A stretch of 64,000 nt of DNA from Setoptus koraiensis (GCA_048013815.1 CM106586.1:14570001-14634000); one strand, 5' to 3'; counted from the stretch's first letter, positions 40,601 to 62,156 are shown. Translations and numbers: made by a program. The notes: generated from the letters alone by a model not told the origin.

Positions 40601-42149
40601 GCCCCTTGGACCGTCCGCGACGCCAACCACCGCCGCCGCCGCCGCCGCCCCCCCCCCCCGCGCGCTCACTCCCGTTGGGGCGCTCATGGTCGCGCGTTAT
40701 TATTTGTTGATTCCACAATCAACCCGCCGGCTGCTCGGGCGTGCTGCTGCGCATTGCCGTCTGCTCACCTGACCTTGTTACGCAACCCCCGCAATCTCGC
40801 TGCAATGTTCGCAACGGACCCCAACGACGGCCCCATTGCCATTCAAATTGGCCGGCGCTCGAATCCATCCATCTCGTCACCGTGGTCGCTGCGGCATACA
40901 ATCGTCGGCGTCGTGCGCTGGGCCCCACTTCGCCCCGCAACAACATGTGATATTGTTGTGATTGACAACGGCGCTCAATGGTGGCACCGATCATCGCAAA
41001 CAACCGTCGCCGTGCCTACCAATCACGTAACAAACGTCTAACACTGCAAACAACACACAGTTGGACTCGAGCGACGAACAGGCGGCCGCCATAAGGCGCG
41101 AGCTCGACGGACGCGTCCAGCGTATCAGCGAATTAGAGAAGGTAATATTGCGTAATTACTAGTGTTATTTGTTTACAATTGTTTACCTGTGTGTGTGTGT
41201 GTGCCACCGACCCGAGCGTGCGTCTATCGGCGCACGTTACCTGGTGCTGGCCCCCTGATTAAATCAATGCCCATTAAACCCGTAATCTTTTCCCTGTCTC
41301 CGCTCTCTTTCTGGGGCCCAATGGGGGCGCCTTCAATGCGACAATCCACGCGCTGCCCATGCCAGAATCGCAAGTTAATGCCCCGCTTCGTGCTCAAAGA
41401 AATGGACTGTCTGTACATAGAGGAGCTTAGGTCGTCTGTGAATCAATTGATGGTCAATCTGGAGAGTTTGCCCGTGACAAAAGGCCAAAATGGGTCACGG
41501 TACGGCCTGCAAAAATTCCGACGCTACAACAATAGGTGAGTTTTCTTGGCCGGCAGCTCATGATCGATTGTTGATTTGATTTCCCAAAACTGCACCCACT
41601 CGCACCCACAAAGACACACACACGCACACTTTTACACACTTTCGTACACTTTACACACACACTTTTATACACAATTTATACATTTTTGTATACACTTTTC
41701 CGTAGACTTTAGCACAGGTGGCAGCACCGTTTTGAAAGTAGTTTAGGTTTCACTGAAAAGAAACAAAATTAATAAGTTTAATTAGCGCACAAACGCGACA
41801 AAACTCATTACGTAACTTGTGTCTTGTGTTTATCATTTGTCATGTCATCTCACATTTCGCATTGATTAATCATACTCACGTGTTGCCACGAGACGGCCAC
41901 GAGATAAATTGTGATTGCGCGCGTGATTGTGTCAGACAGTGTCTGGCTACTGTCGACCGTGGGACGGTATAACGGTACACAATTGTAATCATGTAATTGT
42001 TTTTTTCTGCTTTGTTTTTCTTTTCATAATAACACACACACGCACACAGCATGCAGGTATTGCAGTCGGTGTTTTATTTAATGCAACGGCAACTGTCATA
42101 GTGCGGCCAAGATAGACAGACCAAAAGTTGCAAACATTGACCAGACACA

Positions 42150-42191
<42 letters not shown>

Positions 42192-45100
42192 GTATGCATG
42201 CACGTGGCAATCACGTTGCCGCGCTCAGACGGATAAAATTTCCAGACAAATACAAACAAACGAACGCGCGCGCGCGCCAGTTTATCTAGTTTGACATTTC
42301 AACTGCACGCCGGCCCCGCCGGCGGTCGTGATTTTTTTCGTCTATTCCATTTCATTCAATTCGAAACATAATCATTACAACTATCATTATTGTTGGCGTT
42401 GCGCAACGCATAGTTGTTGCGCGCCTCTGCCGGCTACGACGACCAGCACTGCTCGTACCTCACAATATGCGAAAAAAAAACATATATATATACAGCCGAA
42501 AAATATACGCGCGATGTGCCAGACAGAAAATCCGAAATGCACTGCGGCAAACGATAGTTAGTGCCAACTTTTCTTGACAGCCAGCGTTCGAGGGGCCATA
42601 AGCAATTTCTATGCACGGCCCACGTCCTGTGGCTGTAATGGCACCGGGGGGAAATTGTGCGCCAGACAGTAGGAAATTGTGCCTCGGATACCGACTGAAC
42701 CGACTAGATATTTGATATGAGATAAACTTGCAATAATAGCAGTAATTTCTGACGCTGGCACACAAGGTCGTTGCATACAGCCATCGATATACTAATAACC
42801 CGGCCAGTGGCTGTGAGCGGCAAGGGGCCCCGCTCGCAATTATCCTCTCTGTTGTAACGGATCTGTTGTAGCGGCTCTGTTGTAGCGGCTCTGTTGTAGC
42901 GGCTCTGTTGTAACGGCTCTGTTTCGGATAGATGGCGAGCTGAATGGCTGGACGGGGCGCTGTTTTGAATAGATAGCAACTCGCGACAAATCGCAGCAAC
43001 CACCGCGACTAGCTGAATGGCACCGATAACTAGCGCGCCAGCAGTCACTGTTTTTTGTTTGTGCCAGCCACGACATGTATCAATGTCAGCCTGTCGCTTG
43101 ACATTGATCCGATTTAATAAATAAATATCCGATTGATTGAATTGGCCCTGTCTCGCTGCCAGTTGCACACACGCGCAAACACACAATTCACAATTGGCAG
43201 CCAGATAAATTGATCGAGAAATAAAGGATAAGACCGGGGCCCCGAATAGGTGCAGCCGAAATTGCTGCCGATTGCTTTTTTGGCTGGCTATTATTGCTTT
43301 TTAGCTGCTGTTTGCCAATTGTCCGGCCGGGGCTTAATGGTCTCGCTAAGCTGCCCGACACATATGGTTGGCCCGATTTTTTGCCGTTGTCGCTGCTGTT
43401 GTCGTTGGCGCTGTTGTTGTTTTTGTTGTTGCCGAGTCAAGTGTATAGTGAGTATCTAAGTGCACTAATAACCAACTGACTCAGTTGAACTGAGGATTGG
43501 TGGCCAGTAGGTGCCCGCTGCGAGTCCATTTGTGATAATTGTATAATTGGCAAGACACTTTGGCGCACGGGAGAGGGGCCCGCTTGAAACTGATTAATTG
43601 GCGTTTAGTTGACTGGAGAAGAAGAAAAAAAAGGAGAGCAATTGTGTCCATTGAGGAACGATGTTGTCGGCGTTGTTTTTGCCCTTGTCAAGTGCATTGG
43701 CGGCTGCATCATTCGGCTCACCAGTCAGCAATTGCAATACCGATTGACCACTGAAGCGGAACTGGCTGCAGAGCCGGACAATCGCACCGCTGCCCGCCAA
43801 GTAAAGAGTTACTTGACTATCACAATATCGGTGTTATAATAATTCAACAACTCTATCTATTGCATCATCGAACGGGGCCTGGCCAATGGGCAAAAAGGGG
43901 CCAGAGGGAAAAAGAAGCGAGATTTGCTTTCAAATTGTGAGTTCGTCGAGCTCACAATGGTGCCCACTGTGGTGATTTCTGGACAGTGCCCGCAGCTACT
44001 CGGGCTCGAATCAAGCGTTTGAATCAAAGTTGCAACAACAACCAAAGAGCGACTCAACAACACGATTCGGCACTAGTTGGCGGCGATGCCGACCACTGCA
44101 CCAATGCTGTAATGATGGCCCCACTATTACGTAATAGTGGCGAGCTTTGCCAAGTGCGCCGGGCATCGAGGTAAGGCCGCTTTTGAAAAACGGAAACCGG
44201 CACACGGTGGCGCATTAACGGTGGCCGTGGTATAATTTTTTCCTCCTCTTTGTAGCATTATATTTTCACTAATGCTGGCCAGTGTCTAGTGCCAACGGTG
44301 GTCGTAATAGTAGCTTGCCAGTCGGCATTGTTGTTGTCGGCATTGTCAATGCCACACAACGGGATGCCTATTTTATAATGATCTCGGCCGCGGTCGCGCC
44401 AACAGGCCTGTCTAGCACCCTGTCTGGAACTCGGGCGCCTCCTCTCGGCGGTGTCTCGGCGTATTCGTCTGGCGTATTAGTGTGGCGGCCAGTCGCTCGG
44501 ACCGGCCAATGGGGCCAAGGGCCCGACCAGTTGCCGGGCCGGCCCTCGACCAAGTGCTCCACGCCTAATGAGCCAGCAAGTCGAAAGCCAACAGCCAAAA
44601 CGAAGACGCGTCAGCGGGCCCCATTTTAGCCAGTAATAGCCGTGTGTGTGTGTGTTTGCGCCCCATTTGGGCTGCCGGTCTGCGGCCCGCTACACCCGAT
44701 AGTGGCGCCAGTGCGGCCAAATGGTGCGTATAGGCCATTGAGCACACTCTATTTGTTGATTTCGACGAATATTATTGCATAGCAATAATTCACAATATAT
44801 ATATACATTGTATGAAACACACCAATGCCCGATGTGCGGCCCGCAGTTTTCCGCGCCCGGGCGCGGCTCGACCGAGCAAATACATACACAGACCGCGCGT
44901 TAGTTATCCGCCAAGATAGATTGTAGTTTTGGCCGCGTCTGGGGCCGGGCACAAACTCGTACTCGGAATCCGAGTCTAGGATGCAAAATTTAAAATGCTA
45001 CGACAGTGCAAACACGGCTGCCTCTGCGGGCCCCAAACGGTGTGTTGCAAAAAGTAAAACACGCCATAACAGCGACAGGGACAACGGCGTTCGCAACAAT

Positions 45101-48100
45101 AACATCATTAAATCATTATTTACAGTTTTTGGCCTCTCGGCCCGGCCAAGAGTCTCGGGTCCCCAGTGAGTGGTTAGGCTGTTTTTGGGGTGCGTTGACA
45201 ACAGACAAAAGTGTCATCTCTCGGCCATTCTTGCAACCTCTGCGTGGCTCGCCATTGTATGTCGACAACATTGTGCGTTGTCCGATGTTTTCAAACGGTT
45301 GCATCATGTCGCAAACATGCAATTGTCGCCACTTGCACACTTGCCTAGTCTAAATCGTGGGGCCTCCACGGGCCCCGAACGTTGAGCGAGTTGTGACAAT
45401 GTTGCCCCATCTACAGAGCTTTTTATCGCACGATCAGCACTCACTCTACGGCATGTTTGTTGATGGCGAGGCTGCCTAAACGAGAAACAGACTGTCTGTT
45501 TAACAGAGCCATCGAAAAGTTATTGGTGCAAATCATGGGCCGCTTACTCAATCAAAGTCACGGGCCCATTGAGCGGGCCCATGGCCAGTGATTTGGAAAT
45601 CATTTGCAACATTGGTGCTCGGTGACGATACGGTATTTCGCTGGTGCGTCGAATTTTTGCGAATTGGATAATGCGATTACACAAACAACAAATTTTCGCC
45701 AAAAGCGTCCGCGGCCGATTGTCCGATTGGCGAGACCAGCCGACTCGACAGCCGGCCGGCGGCCGGAATCTGGCCACTGTTTCCTTTGTGCCCCTCAGCT
45801 TCCGAGGCGCCAGCCGCACAGTTTGTGGCGGCCCGAGAGGGCGCTCAATGAGCCCATTAATGGCGCAACAATGTCATTTTAACAAGATTTATCTCTCGCC
45901 CATTGTGTTCATCCATCTGGCTGACCGATCCACTGGCCGGCAAGCTAGCAAGCTGGCAAGCTGGCTGGGTGCGTTGATACATTACAGGTATCGCGCTGAC
46001 ACATTGACCAGCGGCAATCAGCGATGATGGCCATAATGTCACCATTGAGTCCGGCGAGTAGCGGTCAGTTTAACCGTTTTCACTTTGTCAGCGCTGTTAT
46101 CGCGCGCCAACTATTTTCCAATAGTCGCCTTCTCTTTTCCTGCGCGCGCGCCCCCCCCCCTAATACCATTTGCTTATTGGGGCGCCTGGGGGCAGTTATG
46201 TCGTTGTTTTGTGTTGTTGTTGCGTTGTTGTTGCGTTGTTGTTGCGTTGTTGACGCTGTTGTTGTGAGGGGGGCGCATTTTTGATAGCACTTAGCCGAGG
46301 CTCTATTACATCCGCCTGTATCTACCGCAGGTACCCGGTTGGATCGCCCCAAGCCGACTGGGCCCGCTGATACAATAATAATAATAATAATAATAATGCT
46401 GGTTATTATCAGTAAAGCTGTTGTGTTACATTCTCGATTATTGTGCAGAGAGACTCGCTCTGTCCCTGAAAGAGTGTATTTTTCAGTTTGCCTTTTCGGA
46501 GTCAACCAACAACAACAACAGCAACAACAACAGCGAAAACAACGCCCCCGATGACGTCGAACCGACCAACGGAGGGAATTGTATGAATTGTTAATATCCA
46601 AAAAGCAACAGCGCGACATTAAGCATCAAAAGAAAATCTTGTCACGTATCTGGATGTCATTTCCATTGCAACGAGGCTCTCATTTTTTCGGCCCCGAAGC
46701 TCGGTCGTGTCGTTGAGGCACAACTGTGTGTCCGATTGTAGTTATAGTGGCTGTCGCAATAGCGACAACAACAACAACAACAACAGCAAACACAGGCATT
46801 TCACGGGGTCGCGCCAGCGGAGGAGATTGCAGATCTTCACACGCAGGTCGTCACATTCTTTTTATGAAATATTCTTTATTATTCTAAACACTGACAATGG
46901 GGGCCCGATAGATTAGATTACTACCACTAGCGGGGAAAATTGCAATCAAGAGGCAACCCGCAGGCAGCGGGCACAGCTTTTGGTGGCGCACTAACGCACA
47001 GAGCAACGACAAAAGAACAAGGGGCGAGCCTCGAAAGCGATTTGGGGCCGGCGAGCTTGAATTGGATATGGCCGGCACAGGGTGAGCCAAAGTGAGCTTA
47101 AATCCAATGTCATAGCGAGCGAGAGCGAGATGAGAAAAATAACACCGCGCGCGCGCCAGACACAAAAGATATGTGCCCGAAATAAATTGCATTAATGATC
47201 CGTTAACTTGTCTTCGCCAAGAACAGCAACTAGCTCGATTTGGGCCCAGTTGAGCCCGTTTGGGCGCTCAAGGACCCTTTGGGGTTTGTTAATAACTTGT
47301 TTGAGTGTGTGCTGGGGCCACATTTCGACACTCGACCAGAGATAAAGTGCCAAGGTCGGTGTGACATGCTCCAATTGTGTTCTGGCTGGTGATGCATAAA
47401 ACGACCAATACAAATATACGTAGTAGTAGTACGACATTTCGGCCCTTCGGTATCATCATGATTATCATGTATTAATATGAAAATAATCGGAGCGCGACAC
47501 GTTCAATGCGTGCCGAAGATCATTCACCGAATCGTACATGTAACCTTTTTCTCTCATGATGGTTATTTCTCTCGCTCTCTCGCTCTCTGCCAGCGCCTAG
47601 GCACCAATTCAATTTCTACCTGTCCAAGCTTTGGTCAACCAACCAATTATTATTGTATCTTGCGCCGGCATCGGCTGCACAGGCCCCAAATGGCCAAATC
47701 GTTGTATTTTTTGCCCTGTTGTATTTTTTCGCCCTGTTGTATTTTTTTTTTTGCCCTGTCGTATTTTTTTTTCGCCCTGTTGTACTGTTGCAGTGCAAAG
47801 TAGAAGTGGTTCTCTCTAAACAAGTCCGCCCTCTAAGGCAAGTAGAAAAATTGTTCCCCAACAATGTCAGTGTATTTAGTGAATACACCGGACTTGCCAT
47901 TCGACATTGTCAAGACATCGGGCACGCGGTGGACAATAAATAAAAGGAATTACTATTGCATCACAGTTGCTGCTGCTGTCACTGGCGAAACAATGCTCAC
48001 TTGACCATTGCGGGCCCCAGAGAGCCTTCAAGCTGTTTCGCTCGCGACACATGGCAAGACACATTCTTCTGGCGCGCAGACAAAGACAGATAGAGCCCGG

Positions 48101-51100: not shown

Positions 51101-51734
51101 TCCGCTGCCTTCGGCAACGGTGGGGCCCGTCGCAAGCAGACGCCCGGCAAGTCGTTTTCGCTTAGCTTCGCTCGGCTGCCAGCCCCACTAATATATGTAT
51201 ATTTTTGTAGTATGTCTCATCGTGTGTGTGTGTTATTGAATCTTCATTAGACAGTGTTAGGGTGCGAGGCCGCAAATTAGGGAGGCCCGTCCCTGATTGA
51301 GCGTCGCCACCCGCCACTGGCGCCTATCAAGCGGCCCCATGAAGCCGACGCTGCACACATATAGCGCCACGCGATTATTTGGGCCCCTTATATATTATTT
51401 AGGCGGCCCAAGCTGGCGTGCGGGCCGCACAAACAGCGGGGCCCGTCTAACTGGGTAGCTGAAGTAGCGGCGGCATCATTAGCAAACGAGGCCGGCAGTT
51501 TGTTAGATTAGTTAGCTGGTCGGCGGCGGCGACGAGCGAGAGCCACCGACAAATTAACTCGCGCAAGTGATACACACACACAAACAAATTATATTTATCT
51601 TGCATTTGCACAGTATGCATACAGTATGATACTGTCAGTATGCGCCGCTGGCGCCCGCACCAACAAAAGCGGCCCCAAATCCGGCCAGCTTATCGACTTG
51701 AGCGTGCACTGGGGCCCGGCTCTGTGCGGCTTCT

Positions 51735-51797
<63 letters not shown>

Positions 51798-54700
51798 CTC
51801 TGGCTCCCTCTGGCTCTCTCCGGCTCCCTCTAGCTCCCTCTAGCTTCCTCTGGCTCCCTCTGGCTCTATCTGTTTCTATCTGGCGCGTTGTTTCAGCAGC
51901 GGCGCCAGCTCCAGTTGTCACCGGTGACATCTATCTAACCGTCGTCTGGTTATCAGCCGACAAGCACTGCGGCCCATTTCGACCTTGCGCGCACACATTG
52001 TGCACGAGATTCTTTTGGCTCCTCATTCTTTTTGGCTCCTCATTCCCGTCGCCTTGCGAGCCTCACGGGCCCCATGCGCCCCGAGAGCCTCGCGGGCCTC
52101 ATAGGCCTCACAGAGCTCACAGAACTCACAAGCCTTACAGGCCGAGCTCGCGAGGCGACCCCACGGCCCGACGAGGGCGCTATATTAATAATAGGCCCGT
52201 GAGTGTGTGTGTGCTTCTGTCCCAATATCGCTTGCCAATCTGCTGCGTGCGAATGTGTGGTCGGCGTGGCTAGATGGCTAGAAACACGGCCGAAAAATAT
52301 GGATTTTGTGGGCGATTGAACGCGCCAGCGAGCCCCGTGAATAGAGTGGCTGCAAACAGGGGCCCGCTTTGCTGACGGTCGGGCTGAGTGCGTGCGGCCC
52401 GAGCGCCCGCGACAGAGCGGCCGAGGCACGGCGCCCGAGACAGAGCGGCCGCGCCGGAGCGCCCGAGACAGCGGGCCAGTGGCGGTCGGGCACAAACAAA
52501 AAAGAATGGAGTAGGTGAGTGCATTTGTGTTGACATTTAGAGAGGCGAGTCGATTTGGCGAGATAAGCGCGAGTCTCTTTGTCTGGCGGCCATCGGGCCG
52601 GCGGATGACCGATCGAGAGCAATACATAATCGAGCCAGGGAGCAATAGGAGGCAGCGGTGGCAGCGGGCGGGGCAATGGGAGAGGGTGACGGGAGAGGGA
52701 GAGAGGAACGGACAGGCCCGGCCGGGGCCAGTGATGAAATAGGCGCGACAACAATGGACAGCCAGACAGAAACAACAAGCGAACAAGATGAATGACGCAA
52801 TTAAGACAGCCGAACAGACACAACAAAACCCGCTCGCTCGCTCGCTCACTCACTCATCATTAGTTACCATACCAGTTAGTGACGGCGCCATTTTTGATGG
52901 GGGCCCGCTCGCCAATGTCACCGGCCCGACGGCGTCACCGGCGCGGCTGGCGTCACCGGCGGGCCGCGTCGCCAGCGTCTCGAGTCACTCGTGGGCCAGC
53001 TCGCAGCCGCTAACAAGCTCGCCAAGTAGCTTGCCGAGTAGCTTGCCATTTGGCTGGCCGACTAAGCCGCCAAGTGGCCGGCTGCACAAGCAGACAAGTG
53101 GCGTGCGCGTCGGCGTGTCTAGCAGCGCCCGTCTGACGCGCCAGACAGACGGGCCAAATATCGCAAATTGGGGCGCCCGAGTGGCGGCCTAGCGAGCAAC
53201 TAAATAATACATGCGGCAGTGGACAATTGGACGCACAATTGGCCGGCTCAGACGGGCCGAGAGCAAACATATTGGCCCGATAAAACATGATACGATAATG
53301 TTGCGCTCGAGAGCCCAACAGAGAGTTAAATTGCACCAACTGTGATGCTTCGATTGGGCGCTTTTTATCTCGCGCCACTTTCATCCCCCGCTCAGCTCGC
53401 TCGCCTGGCTCGTCTGGCTCAGCTCGCTTATCTGTTTGTTTGGGGCCCATTTATCAGCGTGCCATTTATTAGCCGGCAGCTGATACTGGCCGGCTCGCTG
53501 CCGACAAATATCAGCCCACAAATTGGCCGTTGCGCTCGGCGGGGCCGCGATGCGCAAAGTGCCCCCAAACTATGATGAACGGCAACTGCAAACTGTAACT
53601 ACAGACTGGGCATCGTGATGACGGCGCTAGCGCAAAACAGGCATATTTGTTCGGCTGGCGGTCGCCCGAGTGTCACGCTCAGTGTGCCGGTGTCGCCGGC
53701 CGCCAGGCGGTGCATCGGTACACATGTATATCGTACGCAGTATATCATGCACGGTGCCCATCATACGCGGATAGGTCGCTGTGCGGATATGTCGCTAGGT
53801 GCAGCGCCACTTATTAGGCCGCTGCAAATTGCCTTCGCATGCTCTCTCGCGACCGAAACAAAACGACATTGCGGCATTGTGTTTATTTTGGCCACTCCGG
53901 CCGGACTCTGCCGTTGTTGCGGGCCAACAACAACAACAACGGTAACAGCAACAACAACAACAACAACGGTAACAGCAACAACAACAACAACAACGGTAAC
54001 AGCAACAACAACGGCAACGACAACAACAACGACGACAACAACAACAACGACGACAACAACAACAGCGACAACAACAACCCGATTCGATCGAACGCTACAC
54101 TTGTTCAGCCAAGCGGCAAGTCTGGCCCCGTGAGTGTGTTGCACTTGTTTCAGTTTGGGCCCCAACAAAGCATTCAAGTGGCTTTTGTTTCACAGTGTCT
54201 CGGTGCACAATTGGCGCACAATGGCTCTGGGTCTGGCCATGTCGCCATTTGGCCGCAGTGCGCCACTAACCAGCTCGCTAGGCAAACAGCGGCTCCGCTA
54301 GGCGCACGCTGAGTGATGATATTAAATTTTTTGGGGCCCCTTTGTGCGCGCACAAGTCGCACTGGTCAGCTCGATTGTTGTCGCACAAGCGCATGCAAAG
54401 ATAGGATAATTTTTATTTTTATGTGTGCGCCCGCCTGCCCGTGTCTATCTGCGCAATCTATGATGCAGCAGCATTTCGGCCAAGGTCACCACCGGGCCGG
54501 CCGAAATTGGGGCCGCCGAACTGGCCGCCGATCTGGTCGAGTTGCGAGCGACGGGCTTGTTTTGAGCGGCGCTCTTGTTTTGAGCGGCGGCCCGGCTTTG
54601 AGCGGCGCCCGTTGGCCCGTTCCCGGAGGCCGGCGCTAACTAGCCAACTCAACTGACCGATGTGAATTGAGTGGCGCTGGCGTCGTTTGTTTGTTTGCAT

Positions 54701-57700
54701 GTCGCTTCTTTGCGACCAAATTGCTCTGCCCGACAGCCAGTTGCCGGTCGCCAGAATGAGAAGTGGCCAGTTTGTTTGTTTGCTCCCCTGCCTCCCTTTT
54801 GGCAACCTTTGGCTGGCAAGTTGCTTTGGCACCGACAACAAGGGAGATATCTGAAAAAAAGGGGGCCACTATCTCGAGTGAGAGACGCATACTAATAACT
54901 CGCCAACCGGTCCACTCTATTTAGACACGCAGAGCCTCTATGTGACAAACTGGACATTGTCTTTTGCGCGTCGCCGTGCGCCACTAGACACACTGGCCAC
55001 ACACTGAGGGGCCCCCTTGCGCCGATTGTCCCAAATGTTAATTTATTAACCCTTTACTTGCCTACACTTGATCACTTATACTTTGAGCGCACATAATGCC
55101 ATTAGTGGCACCGTGTGCCGCTGCGTGCCCTGTCGCCCCCCGTACCCTGGCCGTCGCGCACCCTCCGTACCCTCAGGGCAGCCAATTGCACCCCCATGGC
55201 AGCCACCTGTGCCCCCGCGGCGGCCCCTCTCACCCTCTTCATTTGTACCCTCTTCATTTGTACCCTCATCATCACTGACCCATAAATCATTGTATCGCCC
55301 TACCCTGCATCCGCTTGATATCGCCACTTATTTGACACCCACGCACTTTTAATTGGTTGGCCTGACGCCCCCCGCCCCTGACAAACTGCCCCCTGTTTTT
55401 GTCGCTGTCGCAACGACAACCACAACCCCGGCAACAACAACGACAACAACGACGACCAATTGGCCAATTGCGACCGGCCCGTATCCGGCTCAAACGACGG
55501 ACAAAAACTGGTGGCCGCATCAAATCACGACCGCCACCGTGGCGCCGATGAAAACAAATACACCCTCCCATCCCGCGCTTACGCAACATTGTCCCGTTAT
55601 TTTCTCTGTTATTTTGTCACCCGTGCCCACGCACGTACGCGAAATCGCAACACCGACACAACAAACCAAACACAACAAACCGAACCCTCGCTCAAACGCG
55701 CAATATTGCGCAATATGCAAAATGCGTTTGCGTTGTTGTTTCTATTAATATATCCATTAATTTTAAACAACAACAACAACAAACGTCAACCACCGATGAC
55801 CAACTTGAGCGGCGCTCGTTTGCGAACCCCACAAACATGCGCCTGTGACACATGGGCCCCAACGACAACCCCGAAACTTAAACACAATCGCATGTTATTA
55901 TTATTATGACAATATCAAATATGCGACGCCACGCCAAATAAAATCGCCCAAAAACAACGACAACGACAACAAAACACCCACTCAACCAAAACGGCGCCAA
56001 ACCAAACTGTGGCACCGGCAAAACAAACATTCAATTGGCAAACTCTCCCATAAAAACAAGTGATTGCGCTAATGTCCGTCAGGGGGCCCCATTTTTGCAT
56101 GCCCTCAAGTACGAGCACAAACTCAAGTACCCGCTGCTCGTGTTTGCCGTGAACTGCCTGCAGATGCCGCTCTGGTCAATTTTGTTTACAATACTGGAGT
56201 CGCTTGTAAGACTATTGTACGTTGTTTCGTGGCTGGCACTCCGCCAACGACCCTATGTTCGCGCAGTGGCGCCCCCTAATGCGAGCACCGGCAAGCGCGC
56301 TCGCCCGCGCACAGCGTCAATTGTCAGTTGCCGGCTCAAACGCTGTGCCAAGCCCGATTTTCGGGTGCCACGTTTGTCCCAAAATGTGCCAATTTCGCCC
56401 CAAAATGTGCCAATTTTGCCCCCAAATGTGCCAAAATTGGCCAAATTGGCCGGAATTGGCCAAATTGGCTGTGGGACGCTTGTGTGGATCGCAAATTATG
56501 CTGGCCAGTGGGCGATTGCGTTGGCGTCTGTGACGGCGAGCGGATCACTTGATCGCTCATTATATCGCTCATCATTCTGGCTCTTTATTCCCCTCGCGCT
56601 GACCACTCTAATGCGCCCACTCACTCTGCGCCATTCACGGTCACTTTATCAGCAAGCTCATCACCAGTCAACACGGCGGACCCCTCGGCGGGGCCCCCAT
56701 TCGGACCTATAACGCTGGCCGTGATGGCAATCAATCTGTGCGCCCCGCGATCGCGCGGCCTGCACGGCGACACTGCGACCGTGAATGGCGCCCCAAGCCG
56801 CAACGTAGCCGGGCCCAATTTGCTATAGCTATCGGCCGCTATGACTATCGGTGACTCTCTGAATAACTTTGCCATTAATTGAACCAATCAACTAATGTCT
56901 CACTTTATGCTCACTTTATGCTCACTTTATGCACTCCCGCTCGCGCTCGCTCGACATTTCGGTGTCGACTGCGAACGCCGGCTAATTAATTAACGATGTT
57001 CGCATATCTGGCCAATGTGGCATATCTGACGAATGGGCCCCATGAATGGATAAATGGACAAAACATGAATAAATAAAATAAAATAATCGCAACGACGCAC
57101 ACAACAGATCGCAGGCGTCGCTGTCGCGCGAGGGCCTCGTCGAGAGCCATCCCGTGGAGCCCAGCCTGAGCAAACTGGACGTCATGCTGACCTTCAACCT
57201 GGAGGTGGTGGTGATGGAGGTGCGCGGCCTCAAGTCGCTGGCCCCAAGCCGGATATTGTACTGCACCATGGAGGTGGAGGGCAGCGACAAGCTGCAAACG
57301 GATCACGTCGAGGCGAAAAAGGCCCTGTGGGATACGCAGGGCGACTTCACTACAAATCATCCGTTGCCTTTGGTGAAAATAAAATTGTACGCCGTCAATC
57401 CTGGCCTGTTGTCGCTCGAGGACAAGGAACTGGGCAAATGGATCATACAGCCGACAATATTGTCGCCTAAGACGCCCGAATGGTATCCGGTTAACACGGC
57501 CACAAAGTCCAGTTTGGATCAAGATCTCAAAATTAAAATTATTATTCGCATGGATAAGCCACAAAATTTGAAACATTGCGGCTACCTGTACGCCTACGGC
57601 AAGTCCGTGTGGAAAAAATTCAAACGGCGCTACCATATTCTCATTCAGGTGTCCCAATACACGTTTGTCATGTGCAGCTACCGAGAGAAAAAATCCAAAC

Positions 57701-60700
57701 CGACGGAAATGCTGCAATTGGACGGTTACACCGTCGACTACATAGAGCCCCCCAATGAGCTGCTGCAAATGGAGCAGCAGCTCATTCAGGAGGGCGCCCT
57801 GGCGACCTGGTCAACGGGGCCCAACGCGAACAGTGGCTACAACGGACCCGCGTCGGACAGCAACGCGGATTTGGGTAGCGGCAGCGGCGGCAATTCAGCG
57901 TCAACCAACGGCACGGACGGAAACGATTGCGCTGGCAACGATCTGTCGGGCCGGGGCCGCGATCTGTCCAGCAAATATTATTTTAATGCCGTGAAAGAGG
58001 GCGACTCGGTGGTGTTTGCGTGCGACGACCAACAAGAGTGCTTCGCCTGGGTAATGGCCCTGTATCGGGCCACGGGCCAGGCGCACAAGCCCACGCCCCT
58101 GACTCAGTACACCACTGTGAGTCACCACGGACGGTCGGGCGGACACGGTGGCCTGGCGCACGGCGGCCCGGCCTCAGGCAGCGGACTGGGTGGCGGTTTG
58201 GGCTCGGGCAGTTCGGGCTCGGGCCAGCTGGCGGGCGCCGGTTACCATCACAAGTTGGGCGGCGGCGTGGGCGGCCGCTTTGGGGGTCGCGGTAGCGGAC
58301 AAGCAGGCCACGGCAGCGGGCAGGGTGGCGTGGACGCCGAGGGCCGGGCCCGCAAGCACGGAATGGACGAGTTTATAGCGGCCGATCCGTGCAAATTTGC
58401 GCATCATCAATTGTTCCGGTTGTTGCAACACGAAACACTGTGTTATCGCCTGAAAGATATTTACTGTTCGCTGGGCTGGTTCTCGCCTGGCCAGGTATTT
58501 GTTTTGGACGAATATTGCGCCAGATACGGCGTTCGCACTTGTTATAGGCACCTGACTTATTTGGACAGTTTGTTGGATTTTACGCAACAGGATTATTTTA
58601 TCGATCAGACATTGTTGAATTACGGCTACGACTTTTGTTCGTCGCATGTGGCCGGAAACAGCAGCTCGGCGCATCCCATCGGATCGGTGGCGTTTGATTT
58701 GCGGCCGGACGGCATAGGCACCGTAACGGTGGAGGAGCGCGATTTGTATTTTAGTGTCAAAATGAAATTAGTGAAATTAATAGAGAAACAAATATCCAAT
58801 TTTCGCTACTGTTTTCCGTTCGGTCGGCCAGAGGGGGCGCTGAAGGCCACGCTGAGCCTGTTGGAGCGCGTCATGATGAAAGATCACATGTCCAGTACCC
58901 AGAGTGAGGATGTTCGCGCCCTAATTAAGAAATGTCTCGAAAACGCCGCCCTCATTCACTATTCGAAGATATCCGAACAGGCAGATCTGTCGCTGGGCGA
59001 CAAGTCTCAGCAGCCGCAACAACAACAACAACAACAAGTGTCAGTTGGGTCAACGGCGGCCGACACGATGACGCAACAGGGCGGTCAGTTGGGCAAGCGA
59101 CTGGAAACTGGAGCAACAGCAGCGGCAGCAGCAGCAGCACAGGCCAACAATAGCGGCCAGGTGAAGCTGGTGCGACATGGCAGCAATTTGTCCAGCGGCA
59201 GCCACACTAGCGGAACGAGTGGCGCATCGCTGACCGCTGGTCAGCAACAGGTGACAACAGGTGATGGTGACAGTTTGACGGGCAACAGCAACAGCTTCGG
59301 CGAGCCCTCGTTGGGCCAGCAGCAGAGCAGCGCCAACAACAGCAGCGGCAACAACAACAACAAACCCGTCACAATGGCCCAGGTCATTTGTAATATGCAA
59401 ATGTCGTCGCAACAAAAATTGAAACATCTCATCCGATTGAGCGAGCTGTGCGTGGAACAAGTGCAAGAAAACAACGATTATTACAGCGAGGCGTTCGCTT
59501 GGTACAGCGACCTCATGGTGGATCATTGCGAAATATTTTGGTCACTGTTTCAGGTGGACATGGACAAAATATTGGCCGAACAGTGCAGCGATGATTGGCA
59601 ATCGTTCACACTGTTTCAGGTGCTCAACAATTATCTCCGCTGGGACGAAAATTTGCGAGGGGGCCGATTTCACAATCATTTGAGGGAGTTGTTTGCGCCA
59701 CAAGTCATAAAATATGTCGATCTCATGGAGACTAGCATCACGCGAATGCTTCTGAAGGCGTACGAAAAAAACAATCAGGTCAATTGTCAGCAAGCTGAAC
59801 AAATGTTTGACAAGTGCGACGAGCTGCAAACTTTCATCAGCAATCTGCGCTGGCCAGATCAGTCGTTTGCCGATCATCTCGAACAGAGGCTCAAATTGAT
59901 GGCATACGAAATGTGCGAGTCGTGCGTCCAGCGAACACTGCAGGCCTTCCAAATGGTCGAGCGGAAGTCGAACAAGTGGACCGCGGCCACCACCCAGGGC
60001 TACATTGTGCCCGTGGACATGTTTCTCATGATCAATTTGGTGCTTGAGGCGCGCATCAAGTCGCAAAAGTTGTGCACCTTCAAGGACGAGGACACGGTGA
60101 GTTTTGAGTTCTGTTTTCGTCATTTGTGTTTACTTGTTTATTTGGTATTTGCATTTGTATATGCATAATAAATATAAATTCTGAGAAAAAAATGCTCGTC
60201 ATGACTAACACGCCGACAACGCTCAATGGTCTGTCTATCCACAATTATCTATCCACAACAAATAATTTGCCCACACTGAACACGTGACGCGCTCGTGCAA
60301 AATGCAAAATGCAAAATAAACAGCAACAATATCACGAGCGCATCGATCGCATGGTAGAGGCGACCCTGGACGAAATGCAAACAGGTCTCATGTTGAAGGT
60401 TAGTAATGACGCAATACGCGCACCATAATTAGTCTATGGGCAACACACATGATGGCCAATGAGCCCATTAAACAACATATAACAACAATAACTCTCTCAT
60501 TTGGAAATCGCCCAACTGTCACTCTCATTTGATGGCAATTTGCGCTCTTTGCGCCATCGTGTTTGCTTAAAATAAATCGTGTTTGCGCAATAAAATTTGC
60601 GCAAATGCAAAACGCAACCAACAATTTTCGCAACTCCAACAATTTGCTACTGCAAACTATCTACAACAAATGCCAAATATGTATTGATGGATACGTATTC

Positions 60701-62156
60701 AATTCTACATCTCATTTAACCAAATCAAATCAATCACTGTGCGCGATATATAGCTACTGAGCGCGCTAGAGGCCACCCTCAACAAGTTGTCGCGCTACGA
60801 CGAGGGCTCCCTCTTGGCGCCCATCCTGTCGCTTACGGTAAGTGATTACGCTGACGTAACACTGATTAATGCTGGCTAAGTAATTAGTCGGTAGGCACAT
60901 AATTGACTAATTAACGAGCACATGTAGACTAATGAATTGTCACGTAATGTTCATGTCATGTTACATAATGTACGCACTAATCACACAACTACCATTATTG
61001 ATTCGAAATAAAACAAACAAATTTCAACTGATCCAATAACAGTACAAACAGGGCATGTCTAGCTCTGGCAGGGACATAAGCAAACTGTACATAACATTCG
61101 TGTCCAACAGTTGCGAACAAATGCGCCAAAAGATCAACGACGAGCTCTGGGTGATCAACCTGTTCGAGGTGAGTAGTGATAGTCCATGTAGATCCATGAG
61201 TCATTGGCTCACCAAGTTACTCTACTCATCAATTAGCAGCACTCATTAATTAACCTAAAAACCAAACATTTAATTCGATCAATCAACCCGTCCATCGGCA
61301 CTGATTTTGGCGCCTGGGCACGCGCTGTCCGTCGGTCTCGGCAACAACGCGTGCCAACAACGCGTGCCAACAACGACGCCCACGACAACAGCAATGGTAC
61401 GCCGCTCAGATGACCATTCTGTGCACTTGGCTGAGCGAAAGGATCGATCACAGTCTTCACAGTGTCCAGTTGGTGGCGCTGTCGAGCATATTGCACAAGC
61501 TGCATTTGGACATGTCGCTGCAGGGTCTGGCCGAGGACAAACTGAATTTAAAGTCGTTTCAGACCATCGTTAGCCGGCTAAAGGTGGAGGAAACCGCAGC
61601 CTCGTTGGGCGGCACCGCGCCAGAGGGCGCCACGACCATCACCTCAAATCTGTTGTCTTCGTTGGCGGCCAACACTCAAAAATATCACCAGCCGACGGGC
61701 GGCGCCGCCGGCGCCGGCCCGCAGCCCGGCGGCCAACAAGCGGACAGCTCGCTGGACAGCAACTCGGTCACTTCTTTCATGACAAACAACAACACAGCAC
61801 AGCCAACAGGTGATAGCAGCACAACAAGTCAGGGCAGTCAATTGTTTCAGGCCACTTCGTCCATTATTAATAATCCCCTAAACAGTCTAACCAGTTTGGC
61901 CAACATAGGATTTGCGCGGGCGGGCAGCGGCAGCACCACGGCCAGCAGCAGCAGCGCCGGCACGAACACCGGCGCCGACCAGCAGCAACAATTTTCTCTG
62001 GCCAACCATTTGCCAAATCAGTATCAACGCCAGCAGCAGCAGCACCAATTCGCCTCCATGGCGCCGGACCAGAACGCGCCGCAAGCGCCCGACAACAACA
62101 TCGCCGACCGGGCGCTCCAGTCGGCCACGCGCATGTTCGAGCGGCTGTGGCAGTGA
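24635..62156 (+). CDS. CADPS: Calcium-dependent secretion activator CAPS/UNC-31, join(24635-25648, 38183-38650, 41061-41141, 41366-41535, 57108-60096, 60324-60398, 60754-60837, 61052-61168, 61392-62156), ~1,920 aa
   Basis: All eight introns are GT-AG with compatible phases. The spliced length is 5,763 nt, a multiple of 3, and the product is collinear with the CAPS N-terminal region, C2, PH and MUN domains. Confidence 0.96.
27501..27750. repeat. Two degenerate ~10-bp T-tract minisatellites (27501-27570 and 27671-27750)
   Basis: tcactttttg / ccattttttg / ccgcttttcg blocks in exact 10-bp register, then tgccaRYttt-type units. Confidence 0.85.
27959..28252 (-). CDS. Nested antisense ORF (97 aa) in CADPS intron 1; possibly a frameshifted small gene or TE fragment
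   Basis: aaagatATG start in an AT-rich island; acidic N-terminus. A shifted frame continues as the coiled-coil-like [28 protein letters not shown] to ~27893. Confidence 0.35.
   Translation of the reverse strand: MEQLLNNYRIMDDQLAYLDILSLQPEFNIQEVWSFVPAETNQSQNSLYPMVDPNEVCPMQPITDEVCSPKARASSSKMEVKHSALHCQQKQGISSRN
28339..28532. mobile_element. 194-bp MITE with perfect 15-bp TIRs and TA target-site duplication
   Basis: GGGTAGGGCAAATCG (28339-28353) and CGATTTGCCCTACCC (28518-28532), flanked by TA at 28337-38 and 28533-34. The empty site reconstructs to the palindrome AGTACT. Confidence 0.8.
30970..31067. repeat. Compound (AAC/AGC)n repeat
   Basis: Read directly. Confidence 0.9.
31644..31745. repeat. 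20-bp (2x10) minisatellite aacgcaaaag-aacgcgaRcg
   Basis: About five 20-bp units in exact register. Confidence 0.93.
35211..35265. repeat. 10-bp tandem repeat RagttYggat x5
   Basis: aagttcggat aagttcggat gagtttggat gagttcggat gagttcggat aagtt. Confidence 0.95.
38183..38650 (+). CDS. CADPS: CADPS coding exon 2
   Basis: Acceptor ttttaccgtAG; [13 protein letters not shown]...[17 protein letters not shown]...[30 protein letters not shown]; donor GTGAGT at 38651. Confidence 0.95.
39141..39180. repeat. 10-bp tandem repeat actgcgaaac x4
   Basis: Read directly. Confidence 0.95.
39671..39807. repeat. (GACAACAAC)n 9-bp repeat in CADPS intron 2
   Basis: Long near-perfect array; it generates the spurious poly-ND, poly-V and LLS ORFs in the track. 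Confidence 0.97.
41061..41141 (+). CDS. CADPS: CADPS coding exon 3 (81 nt, absent from the ORF track)
   Basis: [27 protein letters not shown] matches [22 protein letters not shown]; acceptor cacacAG, donor GTAATA. Confidence 0.95.
41366..41535 (+). CDS. CADPS: CADPS coding exon 4
   Basis: [37 protein letters not shown]; acceptor tgccAG; donor AG|GTGAGT, phase 2. Confidence 0.95.
42152..42189. repeat. (CA)n microsatellite
   Basis: Read directly. Confidence 0.97.
42847..42923. repeat. 14-bp tandem repeat ctctgttgtaRcgg x5.5
   Basis: Read directly. Confidence 0.95.
47705..47785. repeat. ~18-20-bp T-tract repeat (T)n-gccctgtYgta x4
   Basis: Four units with variable T-run length. Confidence 0.85.
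48361..48418. repeat. 24-bp tandem repeat x2.4
   Basis: tttggccccactgtcggctgccgg x2 plus tttggcccca. Confidence 0.95.
51737..51870. repeat. (TC)n microsatellite (51737-51793) grading into a 10-bp tRgctcYctc array (51801-51870)
   Basis: Read directly; seven 10-bp blocks in register. Confidence 0.95.
53925..54078. repeat. Compound (AAC)n repeat with ggtaacagc spacers
   Basis: Read directly. Confidence 0.93.
56379..56469. repeat. ~21-bp then ~10-bp degenerate repeats (caaaatgtgccaatt.., ccaaattgg)
   Basis: Read directly. Confidence 0.8.
57108..60096 (+). CDS. CADPS: CADPS coding exon 5 (2,989 nt; C2, PH and most of MUN)
   Basis: The phase-2 join gives RRYNNR-SQASL. Motifs [104 protein letters not shown]; donor ACG|GTGAGT. 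Confidence 0.97.
60324..60398 (+). CDS. CADPS: CADPS coding exon 6
   Basis: [25 protein letters not shown] matches CAPS HQYHSKIDELIEETVKEM; donor GTTAGT. Confidence 0.92.
60754..60837 (+). CDS. CADPS: CADPS coding exon 7
   Basis: [28 protein letters not shown] contains the KLSRYDEG motif; donor GTAAGT. Confidence 0.95.
61052..61168 (+). CDS. CADPS: CADPS coding exon 8 (alternative in-frame acceptor at 61043)
   Basis: [39 protein letters not shown]; donor GTGAGT at 61169. Confidence 0.9.
61392..62156 (+). CDS. CADPS: CADPS terminal coding exon 9
   Basis: [23 protein letters not shown]...LQG...[11 protein letters not shown], then a long low-complexity tail to TGA. Confidence 0.95.
   Translation, partial: QWYAAQMTILCTWLSERIDHSLHSVQLVALSSILHKLHLDMSLQGLAEDKLNLKSFQTIVSRLKVEETAASLGGTAPEGATTITSNLLSSLAANTQKYHQPTGGAAGAGPQPGGQQADSSLDSNSVTSFMTNNNTAQPTGDSSTTSQGSQLFQATSSIINNPLNSLTSLANIGFARAGSGSTTASSSSAGTNTGADQQQQFSLANHLPNQYQRQQQQHQFASMAPDQNAPQAPDNNIADRALQSATRMFERLWQ

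What the first reader, a model, noticed from the sequence alone, without database searches (positions are those of the whole stretch)
41041..61391. CADPS 3' splice sites are A/C-rich and lack a polypyrimidine tract, even after a 15.6-kb intron
Seen, last 20 nt of each intron: intron 2 acactgcaaacaacacacAG (1 T); intron 3 ccacgcgctgcccatgccAG (2 T); intron 4 cgcaacgacgcacacaacAG (0 T); intron 5 gcaaaatgcaaaataaacAG (2 T); intron 7 tccaataacagtacaaacAG (3 T); intron 8 aacgacgcccacgacaacAG (0 T). Intron 6 is mixed. Only intron 1 (and the intron at 94-189) has a normal U-rich tract. Protein homology and phase fix these junctions, and the donors are strong (GTGAGT x5, GTAAGT). Established: metazoan U2AF65 recognises a U-rich tract, which is normally strongest in long introns. 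Inference: a divergent acceptor-recognition mode, such as branch-point/SF1- or exon-definition-driven splicing, a CA-binding factor, or altered U2AF.
Basis: partly seen in the sequence, partly recalled or inferred. Interest (0 to 1): 0.75.

Follow-up and report, generated by a model that had tools for sequence, protein, structure and literature searches.

The report
Mite CAPS introns lacking uridine tracts
In the CAPS neurosecretion gene of an intron-poor gall-mite-type genome, most introns end without the usual uridine-rich tract and instead sit behind unusually long stretches free of AG, which suggests, without RNA evidence, that the splice acceptor is chosen as the first AG after a distant branch site.

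Summary
All six quoted acceptor strings are at the stated coordinates. Homology fixes five junctions exactly. The intron-7 acceptor is probably 9 nt upstream (AG at 61041-61042). The "15.6-kb intron" probably holds a conserved in-frame cassette exon (56061-56216).

CAPS introns 2, 3, 4, 5 and 8 have 5-15% T in their last 40 nt. The figure is 25-53% for nine verified introns in other genes of this genome and 33-60% in an outgroup mite's CAPS. So this is not a genome-wide loss of the tract.

New here: CAPS acceptors follow AG-free zones of 76-568 nt (about 80 AG expected, none seen, 49 GA seen). Donors are near-consensus GTRAGT. ACTRAY branch-like motifs are enriched, mostly 60-120 nt upstream.

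The U2AF large subunit has canonical RNA-binding domains but no RS domain and a doubled inter-RRM linker.

Best reading (about 0.5): the acceptor is defined as the first AG after the branch site, and the U-tract is optional. This is a variant of known distant-branch-point and yeast-like architectures. No RNA evidence was available.

First readers of this scan noted the same trait in at least seven other windows of this genome; those notes are unchecked.

The parts
25280..25648 (+). CAPS N-terminal coding exon (open frame from 24566; true start not fixed). Donor is CAG|GTGAGT.
   Evidence: tblastn with Brevipalpus, Tetranychus and Dinothrombium CAPS; donor context
25649..38182 (+). Intron 1 (12.5 kb). 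It has an ordinary T/C tract (7 T and 7 C in the last 18 nt). AG-free zone 38105-38180 (76 nt).
38183..38650 (+). CAPS exon B. Donor GTGAGT.
38651..41060 (+). Intron 2. The last 18 nt hold 1 T. CTAAC lies 19 nt before the AG. The body is A/C-rich (A+C 0.60). AG-free zone 40491-41058 (568 nt).
41061..41141 (+). CAPS exon C ([17 protein letters not shown]...). Donor GTAATA.
41142..41365 (+). Intron 3. C-rich end (10 C and 2 T in 18). AG-free zone 41217-41363 (147 nt). CTGAT lies 107 nt upstream.
41366..41535 (+). CAPS exon D ([13 protein letters not shown]...). Donor AG|GTGAGT, phase 2.
41536..57107 (+). Intron 4 (15.6 kb if the cassette exon is skipped). The last 18 nt hold 0 T. AG-free zone 56829-57105 (277 nt). 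CTGAC lies 78 nt and CTAAT 122 nt upstream.
56061..56216 (+). Probable in-frame cassette exon (156 nt). AAG acceptor with 3 T in 18 and a 249-nt AG-free zone. Donor TT|GTACGT.
   Evidence: tblastn match to F. setiger CAPS residues 294-333; junction refinement
57108..60096 (+). CAPS large exon (C2_CAPS, PH and most of MUN). Donor ACG|GTGAGT.
   Evidence: Pfam
60097..60323 (+). Intron 5. A-rich end (2 T, 11 A in 18). AG-free zone 60186-60321 (136 nt). ACTAAC lies 115 nt upstream.
60324..60398 (+). CAPS exon F ([25 protein letters not shown]). Donor GTTAGT.
60399..60753 (+). Intron 6. Mixed end (6 T in 18). AG-free zone 60464-60751 (288 nt).
60754..60837 (+). CAPS exon G. Donor ACG|GTAAGT.
60838..61042 (+). 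Intron 7. AG-free zone 60928-61040 (113 nt). ACTAAT lies 62 and 110 nt upstream, and ACTGAT 11 nt upstream.
61043..61168 (+). CAPS exon H ([14 protein letters not shown]...). Donor GAG|GTGAGT.
61169..61391 (+). Intron 8. The last 18 nt hold 0 T. AG-free zone 61240-61389 (150 nt). ACTGAT lies 87 nt upstream. A possible hairpin lies between them (not significant).
61392..62156 (+). CAPS last coding exon, including the stop codon.

Best explanation
The locus is the CAPS/CADPS gene of an intron-poor, eriophyoid-type mite.

Shown:
- Five of its eight introns, and a probable cassette exon, end in T-poor, A/C- or C-rich sequence.
- Seven of eight acceptors lie behind AG-free zones of 113-568 nt.
- Donors are near-consensus GTRAGT.
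- ACTRAY branch-like motifs are enriched in the AG-free zones, mostly 60-120 nt from the acceptor.
- Other genes of the same genome keep ordinary T/C tracts.
- The U2AF large subunit keeps canonical RRMs, the tryptophan motif (ULM) that binds the small subunit, and the C-terminal UHM. It has no RS domain and has a doubled inter-RRM linker.

Inferred:
- In this lineage the 3' splice site is specified chiefly as the first AG downstream of a branch site that is often distant, together with a strong 5' splice site. The uridine tract is optional.
- Because any AG within reach would compete, selection removes AGs over a long stretch.
- The spacer is then free to take the composition of the local (AAC)n-type low-complexity sequence. 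These runs are strongly sense-biased in this gene (30 AAC runs against 8 GTT runs).
- These are weak-tract, AG-dependent U2-type introns. They probably lean on the small U2AF subunit and on SF1/U2 pairing rather than on U2AF65 binding a U-tract.
For: - Junctions: tblastn plus refinement against several mite CAPS proteins, and an intronless relative that reads straight across introns 5-8.
- T-poverty: CAPS T40 is 0.19, against 0.37-0.39 in eight to nine introns of other genes here and 0.45 in Dinothrombium CAPS.
- AG-free zones are 76, 568, 147, 277, 136, 288, 113 and 150 nt. AG spacing in the same introns has median 10 and P(>=100) = 0.023. In the zones 79.9 AG are expected from composition, 0 are seen, and 49 GA are seen. 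Seven of eight zones have shuffle P <= 0.0035.
- Median zone length is 148.5 nt here, against 66 (other genes), 92 (F. setiger), 48 (L033/L034) and 38.5 (Dinothrombium).
- Donors are GTRAGT in 14 of 17 homology-verified introns of this genome, against 3/18 in Dinothrombium.
- ACTRAY in the zones: 8 observed against 2.5 expected in CAPS, 5 against 1.0 in other genes, and 1 against 1.2 in Dinothrombium.
- L033/L034 relatives have CTAAC or CTGAC in 6/6 introns, with C- or A/C-rich spacers.
- U2AF65: TIGR01642 at 424 bits. RRM1 and RRM2 match human chains with RNP motifs intact. The protein starts 16 aa before the ULM tryptophan, and no RS-coding frame lies in the 1 kb upstream.
- An SF1 domain is present. 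A U2AF35-like pair of CCCH fingers 138 aa apart is present.
- Background from papers: long AG exclusion zones mark distant branch points (PMC1431707). Distant-branch-point introns occur in intron-poor yeast (PMC3239191).
Against: - There is no RNA evidence for any junction or branch point.
- The sample is small: 17 homology-verified introns in this genome, from 264 kb.
- CTRAY alone is not enriched in the CAPS zones (13 against 8.7). Introns 1 and 6 have no such motif.
- Intron 2 has its CTAAC only 19 nt from the AG yet has a 568-nt AG-free zone. Distance to the branch site therefore does not explain all zones.
- U2AF65's uridine-reading residues are intact, and many introns here do have T/C tracts. 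The tract is therefore still used somewhere.
- F. setiger keeps an RS/RD-rich block between ULM and RRM1, and some relatives keep a few RS dipeptides. RS loss is not uniform across the clade.
- Tetranychus also has a very short N-terminus, so a short N-terminus is not unique to eriophyoids.
- The link between the U2AF65 changes and these acceptors is correlation only.
Confidence: 0.5

Rival explanations
1. The A/C-rich tracts are positive intronic elements. An A/C- or CA-binding protein (hnRNP L, YB-1 or Tra2/SR type) binds them and recruits U2AF or U2 to acceptors that lack a U-tract.
For: - A/C-rich sequence recurs at the orthologous intron 2 of F. setiger (caacaacaacaacaa...) and in L033 intron 6, although intron sequence should be randomised at this divergence.
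- (AAC)n runs are 30 against 8 in favour of the sense strand.
- YB-1 binding to CAUC/CACC motifs is reported to recruit U2AF to weak tracts (PMC3458536).
Against: - The T-poor ends share no motif. Intron 3 is C-rich, introns 4 and 5 are A-rich, and introns 2 and 8 are CAA/CGA-like.
- The sense bias of AAC runs is equally explained by avoidance of G and T, which make GT and AG.
- This idea does not explain the AG-free zones.
- No binding protein was tested.
Confidence: 0.15
2. Neutral drift only. The tract is simply not needed in this lineage, and the CAPS locus happens to be rich in A/C low-complexity DNA. The AG-free zones are a by-product of composition.
For: - A/C-rich patches of 1-1.5 kb lie upstream of exons C and E.
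- Introns are G-poor in every set examined.
- Other genes in a less A/C-rich region have T-rich ends.
Against: - The zones contain 10-22% G and 16-41% A. They hold 49 GA dinucleotides but no AG. Shuffles keeping composition give P <= 0.0035 for seven of eight zones.
- T in the last 40 nt is below the intron's own T content in introns 2-5 and 8.
- GC3 of CAPS (0.68) and of the tyrosine decarboxylase gene (0.62) is similar, so there is no isochore effect.
Confidence: 0.15
3. The junctions are mis-set, and the real acceptors are U-rich sites elsewhere.
For:
- No transcript data are available.
Against: - Residue-exact continuity with several homologues and with an intronless relative.
- There is no other AG for 113-568 nt upstream.
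- Downstream AGs would delete conserved residues.
Confidence: 0.05
4. These are U12-type (minor spliceosome) introns, which normally lack a polypyrimidine tract.
For: Absence of a tract is a U12 hallmark.
Against: - Donors are GTGAGT, GTAAGT, GTTAGT or GTAATA, not RTATCCTT.
- No TCCTTAAC-like branch site lies 10-20 nt from the acceptor.
Confidence: 0.01

Closest known systems
Exons with distant branch points marked by long AG dinucleotide exclusion zones (Gooding et al. 2006, PMC1431707)
   Same: The acceptor is the first AG after a zone of 100 nt or more that is free of AG. The zone is far longer than the usual 20-40 nt.
   Different: In the human class, as I recall it, the zone is largely a long pyrimidine tract and the exons are often PTB-regulated. 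Here the zone is T-poor and A/C-rich. Branch points are not mapped here.
Intron architecture of intron-poor yeasts (strong GTATGT/TACTAAC signals, first AG used, U-tract dispensable, Mud2 without RS domain; distant-branch-point introns, PMC3239191)
   Same: - Intron-poor genome.
- Near-consensus donors.
- ACTRAY motifs enriched.
- Acceptors without U-tracts.
- Large U2AF subunit without an RS domain.
- Branch-to-acceptor distances possibly above 50 nt.
   Different: - It is an animal.
- The branch motif is far from invariant here.
- Many introns keep T/C tracts.
- U2AF65 keeps its U-reading RRMs and the motif that binds the small subunit.
- The spacers show no significant secondary structure, whereas structure is needed in the yeast cases.
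AG-dependent introns with weak polypyrimidine tracts in flies and mammals (dependence on U2AF35 contact with the AG; my own knowledge)
   Same: U2-type introns whose tract is too weak for U2AF65 alone; the AG itself carries weight.
   Different: In those systems the tract is interrupted, not absent, and such introns are a regulated minority. Here 0-2 T in 18 nt is found in five introns of one essential gene.
Canonical arthropod 3' splice sites, e.g. the orthologous CAPS gene of Dinothrombium tinctorium (L035)
   Same: Same gene, several shared intron positions, GT-AG boundaries.
   Different: Dinothrombium has 18 introns in the gene, 6-12 T in the last 18 nt of every intron, degenerate donors (GTRAGT in 3/18) and a median AG-free zone of 38.5 nt.

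Membership tests
CAPS/CADPS (calcium-dependent secretion activator) | C2_CAPS, PH and MUN domains in that order | tested here: met
   Pfam on 57154-60165: MUN 1e-56, C2_CAPS 4.7e-45, PH 5e-05 (just below the curated cut-off, 24.2 against 25.1 bits). Best hits are mite and spider CAPS.
Canonical metazoan U2-type 3' splice site | Uridine- or pyrimidine-rich tract in the last 20-40 nt of the intron | tested here: not met
   T40 is 0.05-0.15 in introns 2, 3, 4, 5 and 8. The pyrimidine fraction of the last 18 nt is 0.28-0.44 in introns 2, 4, 5 and 8. Intron 3 is C-rich (0.67). Intron 1 meets the criterion.
Canonical metazoan U2-type 3' splice site | GT-AG boundaries with a U1-complementary donor | tested here: met
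   All eight introns are GT...AG. Six of eight donors are GTRAGT.
Distant-branch-point / AG-exclusion-zone introns | AG-free zone of about 100 nt or more directly upstream of the acceptor | tested here: met
   Seven of eight zones are 113-568 nt; the cassette exon's is 249 nt. P(>=100) for AG spacing in the same introns is 0.023.
Distant-branch-point / AG-exclusion-zone introns | Branch point mapped at the upstream end of the zone | not testable with these tools
   Only motif positions are available: ACTAAC at -115 (intron 5), CTGAT at -107 (intron 3), ACTGAT at -87 (intron 8), ACTAAT at -62 and -110 (intron 7). There are no lariat data.
Yeast-like intron architecture of intron-poor genomes | Near-invariant branch-site consensus | tested here: inconclusive
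   ACTRAY is enriched (8 against 2.5; 5 against 1.0 in other genes). CTRAY within 60 nt of the acceptor occurs in only 2/8 CAPS and 4/9 other introns. It occurs in 6/6 introns of relatives L033/L034.
Yeast-like intron architecture of intron-poor genomes | Large U2AF subunit without an RS domain (Mud2-like) | tested here: met
   The N-terminus is 16 aa before the ULM, and the whole protein has 2 RS/SR dipeptides. No RS frame lies in the 1 kb upstream. Not confirmed by transcripts of this species.
Yeast-like intron architecture of intron-poor genomes | Loss of the small U2AF subunit (as in S. cerevisiae) | tested here: not met
   U2AF65 keeps the YWDVPP tryptophan motif. A 347-aa frame with two CCCH fingers 138 aa apart lies at C2:9531516-9531989. 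Its sequence could not be read.
U12-type introns | RTATCCTT donor and TCCTTAAC branch site close to the acceptor | tested here: not met
   Donors are GTGAGT, GTAAGT, GTTAGT or GTAATA.
U2AF large subunit (U2AF65/U2AF50) | ULM, RRM1, RRM2 and C-terminal UHM, with conserved RNP motifs | tested here: met
   TIGR01642 at 424 bits over a 310 cut-off. PDB matches to U2AF65 RRM1-RRM2 (E = 1.6e-86) and UHM chains. Alignment A1.
U2AF large subunit (U2AF65/U2AF50) | N-terminal arginine-serine domain | tested here: not met
   Absent here and in all roughly 17 eriophyoid-type orthologues with an intact N-terminus. Outgroups have 49-130 aa with 7-20 RS/SR. F. setiger has an internal RS/RD block instead.

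The most novel reading that the evidence does not exclude
Eriophyoid-type mites may have moved, within animals, to a 3' splice-site code in which the uridine tract is dispensable. The acceptor would be read as the first AG after a branch site that can lie 60-120 nt away, and fidelity would be kept by purging AGs. This would go with a U2AF large subunit that has lost or displaced its RS domain and doubled its inter-RRM linker.
Probability: 0.3. Interest if true: 0.75.

Novelty: new variant of a known kind. Interest (0 to 1): 0.55.

Why it matters
Animal 3' splice sites are taught, and modelled in gene finders, as branch site plus U-rich tract plus AG within about 40 nt. Here an essential neuronal gene in an animal has five acceptors with 0-2 T in the last 18 nt, very long AG-free zones, and a U2AF large subunit without an RS domain.

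If confirmed by RNA data, this would be a natural test case for three questions:
- How much of 3' splice-site choice can be carried by the AG and the branch site alone.
- What the RS domain and the inter-RRM linker of U2AF65 contribute.
- How splice signals change when a lineage loses most of its introns.

Practically, annotation pipelines trained on insects will mis-place acceptors in these genomes. The eriophyoid genome papers I could read do not mention the tract.

Tried and rejected
- **Genome-wide intron set.** The fetch from genomes stopped after 200 kb, and the genome search then gave no loci. Only the window, one 200-kb block of the other chromosome and eight small loci could be read.
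- **De novo intron finder.** I joined open frames with a trained codon model. It gave few and ambiguous acceptors, including a false join of a POU gene to a dehydrogenase gene. Only introns supported by Pfam continuity or homologues were kept.
- **Branch site close to the acceptor.** CTRAY within 60 nt occurs in 2/8 CAPS introns, which is the chance level.
- **Isochore effect.** GC3 is 0.68 in CAPS and 0.62 in the tyrosine decarboxylase gene. Rejected.
- **Structure bridging the branch site and acceptor, as in yeast.** Six spacers have z-scores from -1.2 to +1.3. Not supported.
- **Changed RRM residues in U2AF65.** Rejected.
- **"RS domain lost in all eriophyoids".** I corrected this after reading the F. 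setiger genomic frame, which has an internal RS/RD block.
- **Tetranychus CAPS locus.** Not on record.
- **U12-type introns.** Rejected on the donor sequences.
- **Spliced model.** All searches were exon by exon, by reference. Only short junction flanks were joined inside scripts, to score them against homologues.

Full report
**What the locus is.** The window is G000:C2:14570001-14634000 of a 48.76-Mb genome in two contigs. The open frame 57154-60165 carries C2_CAPS, PH and MUN domains. Its best matches are CAPS proteins of mites, first Fragariocoptes setiger (Eriophyoidea) and unnamed metagenome proteins. CAPS is split into about 19 exons in Dinothrombium but into nine here, one of them 3 kb long. 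That fits the massive intron loss described for eriophyoid mites (PMC7738191; bioRxiv 10.64898/2026.08.24.746826). Neither paper mentions polypyrimidine tracts or branch sites.

**Checking the observation.**
- All six quoted strings are present once, at the stated coordinates.
- tblastn with five mite CAPS proteins, reading of the frames, and scoring of all GT...AG pairs against homologues give these exons: >=25280-25648, 38183-38650, 41061-41141, 41366-41535, 57108-60096, 60324-60398, 60754-60837, 61043-61168 and 61392-62156.
- A relative from a metagenome (P0014, L009) encodes the last 1484 residues in one open frame. It therefore reads straight across introns 5-8 and fixes those junctions to the residue.
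- One correction. All homologues have three residues (x-K-Q) before GMSSSG. The two AGs are in frame and could both be used.
- A second correction. A 156-nt in-frame exon at 56061-56216 matches residues 294-333 of the F. setiger protein. It has usable AAG and GTACGT boundaries. The 15.6-kb intron is therefore probably split in some transcripts.
- Donors are GTGAGT x5, GTAAGT, GTTAGT and GTAATA.

**Is it more than chance?**
- T counts in the last 18 nt of introns 1-8 are 7, 1, 2, 0, 2, 6, 5 and 0.
- AG dinucleotides taken at random inside the same introns have a mean of 4.1 T.
Introns 2-8 sum to 16 against 28.7 (P = 0.02).
- The acceptors are thus not merely unenriched in T; they are somewhat depleted.
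- The depletion is only partly local composition. A/C-rich patches lie upstream of exons C and E. Even so, T in the last 40 nt is below each intron's own T content in introns 2-5 and 8.

**Is it genome-wide? No.** In that block, Pfam continuity and homologues verify nine introns in five genes:
- five in a tyrosine decarboxylase gene;
- one each in a CAF1B/HIR1-type gene, a Vps4-like AAA gene and a C-type lectin gene;
- one in a POU-homeobox gene.

Their last 40 nt hold 25-53% T, and most have plain T/C tracts. The POU intron is a textbook GTAAGT...CTAAC...TTATTTTCTTTTCTTTCTCTTGCAG. The mean T40 of nine is 0.39, against 0.19 for CAPS. The Mann-Whitney test was run on eight of them, without POU (mean 0.37, P = 0.005). 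First readers noted T-poor acceptors in at least seven other windows. I could not test those notes. The trait looks like a class of introns, not a property of all.

**Relatives.**

| Set | Introns | Mean T in last 18 nt | GTRAGT donors | Notes |
|---|---|---|---|---|
| Dinothrombium CAPS (outgroup, Trombidiformes) | 18 | 8.9 (range 6-12) | 3/18 | T-rich acceptors throughout |
| F. setiger CAPS | 8 | 6.4 | 4/8 | About half T-rich, about half A- or A/C-rich; orthologue of intron 2 ends caacaacaacaacaa...tatag |
| L033 + L034 (eriophyoid-type metagenome contigs) | 6 | 3.5 | 4/6 | Spacers mostly C- or A/C-rich (some mixed T/C); CTAAC or CTGAC 16-41 nt before the AG in 6/6 (chance 0.19 each) |
| This genome, all verified | 17 | - | 14/17 | - |

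Strong donors and a weak or absent U-tract therefore go together in the clade. That agrees with the known tendency of intron-poor lineages towards consensus 5' and branch signals (my own knowledge of Irimia, Roy and colleagues; not re-read here).

**The strongest new signal: AG-free zones.**
- The distance from each CAPS acceptor back to the previous AG is 76, 568, 147, 277, 136, 288, 113 and 150 nt. It is 249 nt for the cassette exon.
- Within the same introns, AG spacing has median 10 nt and P(>=100) = 0.023.
- The zones are not G-free. From their own composition 79.9 AG are expected. None occurs, while the mirror dinucleotide GA occurs 49 times. Composition-preserving shuffles give P <= 0.0035 for seven of eight zones.
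- Median zone length is 148.5 nt in CAPS. It is 66 in the other genes here, 92 in F. setiger, 48 in L033/L034 and 38.5 in Dinothrombium.
- In the four short introns (205-227 nt) the zone covers more than half of the intron.
- This is the signature of selection against competing AGs between a branch site and its acceptor, described for human exons with distant branch points (PMC1431707).
- ACTRAY motifs are enriched inside the zones: 8 against 2.5 expected in CAPS, 5 against 1.0 in other genes here, and 1 against 1.2 in Dinothrombium.
- In CAPS the nearest such motifs mostly lie 62-122 nt from the AG.
- Intron 2 is an exception. Its CTAAC lies at -19 but its zone is 568 nt. AG purging may therefore also guard against use of upstream branch-like sites.
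- In yeast, distant-branch-point introns need a folded spacer (PMC3239191). Here the spacers are no more structured than shuffles (z from -1.2 to +1.3). Intron 8 has a possible hairpin, but it is not significant.

**The splicing factors.**
- A U2AF large-subunit gene is present as one open frame. Its RRM1 and RRM2 align almost residue for residue with human U2AF65, RNP motifs included, and its C-terminal UHM matches too.
- The protein begins MPSEGRVTKRRTKSIYWDVPP, only 16 residues before the tryptophan motif that binds the small subunit. No arginine-serine frame lies in the 1 kb upstream, which runs to the stop codon of the neighbouring gene.
- The same short N-terminus is seen in about 17 eriophyoid-type orthologues, including Aceria tosichella and F. 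setiger. Other mites, ticks, insects and a mammal have 49-130 residues there with 7-20 RS/SR dipeptides. Tetranychus is also short, at 29 residues.
- The clade instead has an expanded spacer between that motif and RRM1.
  - In F. setiger's genomic frame the spacer is RS/RD-rich (51 R, 17 RS/SR). The 413-aa database protein omits this block.
  - In this genome the spacer is 162 residues with 1 R, 32 S and 34 H. The whole protein has 2 RS/SR dipeptides.
- The RRM1-RRM2 linker is 49 residues here, against 25 in most outgroups (40-54 across the clade, 26 in F. setiger).
- SF1 is present. A U2AF35-like frame is present, but I could not read its sequence.

**How it most likely works.**
- Shown: T-poor acceptors, long AG-free zones, strong donors, enriched ACTRAY, coexisting ordinary tracts in other genes, and an RS-less U2AF65 with intact RRMs.
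- Inferred: the acceptor is taken as the first AG downstream of a branch site that can be distant. The AG and the branch site carry the information, and the U-tract is optional. The spacer composition then follows local A/C low-complexity DNA; (AAC)n runs favour the sense strand 30 to 8, perhaps because G and T create GT and AG.
- I put this at about 0.5.
- Rivals: A/C tracts as bound enhancer elements (0.15), pure compositional drift (0.15), wrong junctions (0.05) and U12-type introns (0.01).

**Comparison with the known.** It works like distant-branch-point (AG-exclusion-zone) introns and like the introns of intron-poor yeasts. It is not a clean member of either. The human class has long pyrimidine tracts. 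The yeast class has an invariant branch site and, for long spacers, structure. I file it as a new variant of a known kind.

**Limits.**
- There are no transcript or lariat data.
- The sample is 17 homology-verified introns from 264 kb.
- The U2AF65 link is a correlation.

Noticed in passing
window 56061-56216: Probable conserved in-frame cassette exon (52 codons) of CAPS inside the 15.6-kb intron. It is 53% identical to F. setiger residues 294-333. It has an AAG acceptor and a GTACGT donor.
   Followed up: partly
window 61041-61051: Two in-frame AGs lie 9 nt apart at the end of intron 7 (cag|TACAAACAG|GGC). Homology favours the upstream one. This is a possible alternative acceptor pair that adds or removes Y-K-Q.
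   Followed up: partly
window 25649-57107: (AAC)n, (ACA)n and (CAA)n runs of three or more units number 30, 23 and 23 on the sense strand of CAPS introns 1-4. Their complements number 8, 7 and 8. A long (GACAACAAC)n array lies at about 39690-39800. The low-complexity DNA is strand-biased within a gene.
   Followed up: partly
L009 10001-14455 (ENA metagenome contig): A related mite encodes the C-terminal 1484 residues of CAPS in one open frame, so introns 5-8 are absent there. L033 and L034 keep introns 5, 6 and 8 but lack 7. F. setiger keeps 5 and 7 but lacks 6 and 8. Intron loss is differential within the clade.
   Followed up: partly
L001 1270-3162 (-) = G000:C2:9393990-9395870: U2AF large subunit with a 162-aa His/Asn/Ser-rich spacer in place of any RS domain, a 49-aa inter-RRM linker, and a T/N/D/E-rich insert in the UHM. 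A (GACA)n tract lies in the presumed 5' UTR.
   Followed up: yes
L036 4001-5770 (F. setiger): The genomic open frame of U2AF50 is 589 aa, with an RS/RD-rich block between the ULM and RRM1. The database protein (413 aa) omits this block as if it were an intron. This is a likely annotation error.
   Followed up: partly
L013 5061-5063 (minus strand), G000:C1:5005061: An in-frame TAA lies inside the DOT1 methyltransferase domain. The open frames on either side are in the same frame and match Pfam positions 4-35 and 39-205. It could be a pseudogene, an assembly error or read-through.
   Followed up: no
L018-L019 and L030-L031 (G000:C1:5.05-5.18 Mb): Inverted duplicate gene pairs with identical donor contexts: two POU-homeobox genes (B 181517-182743 + and 175585-176775 -) and two BACK/Kelch genes (55117-56889 + and 49728-51491 -). 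A 2116-aa copia-type open frame (RVT_2, integrase) lies at 58368-64715.
   Followed up: no
window 24000-62000: Cumulative GC skew falls steadily across the CAPS gene (C>G and A>T on the sense strand) but is flat in the first 24 kb, where genes lie on both strands.
   Followed up: no
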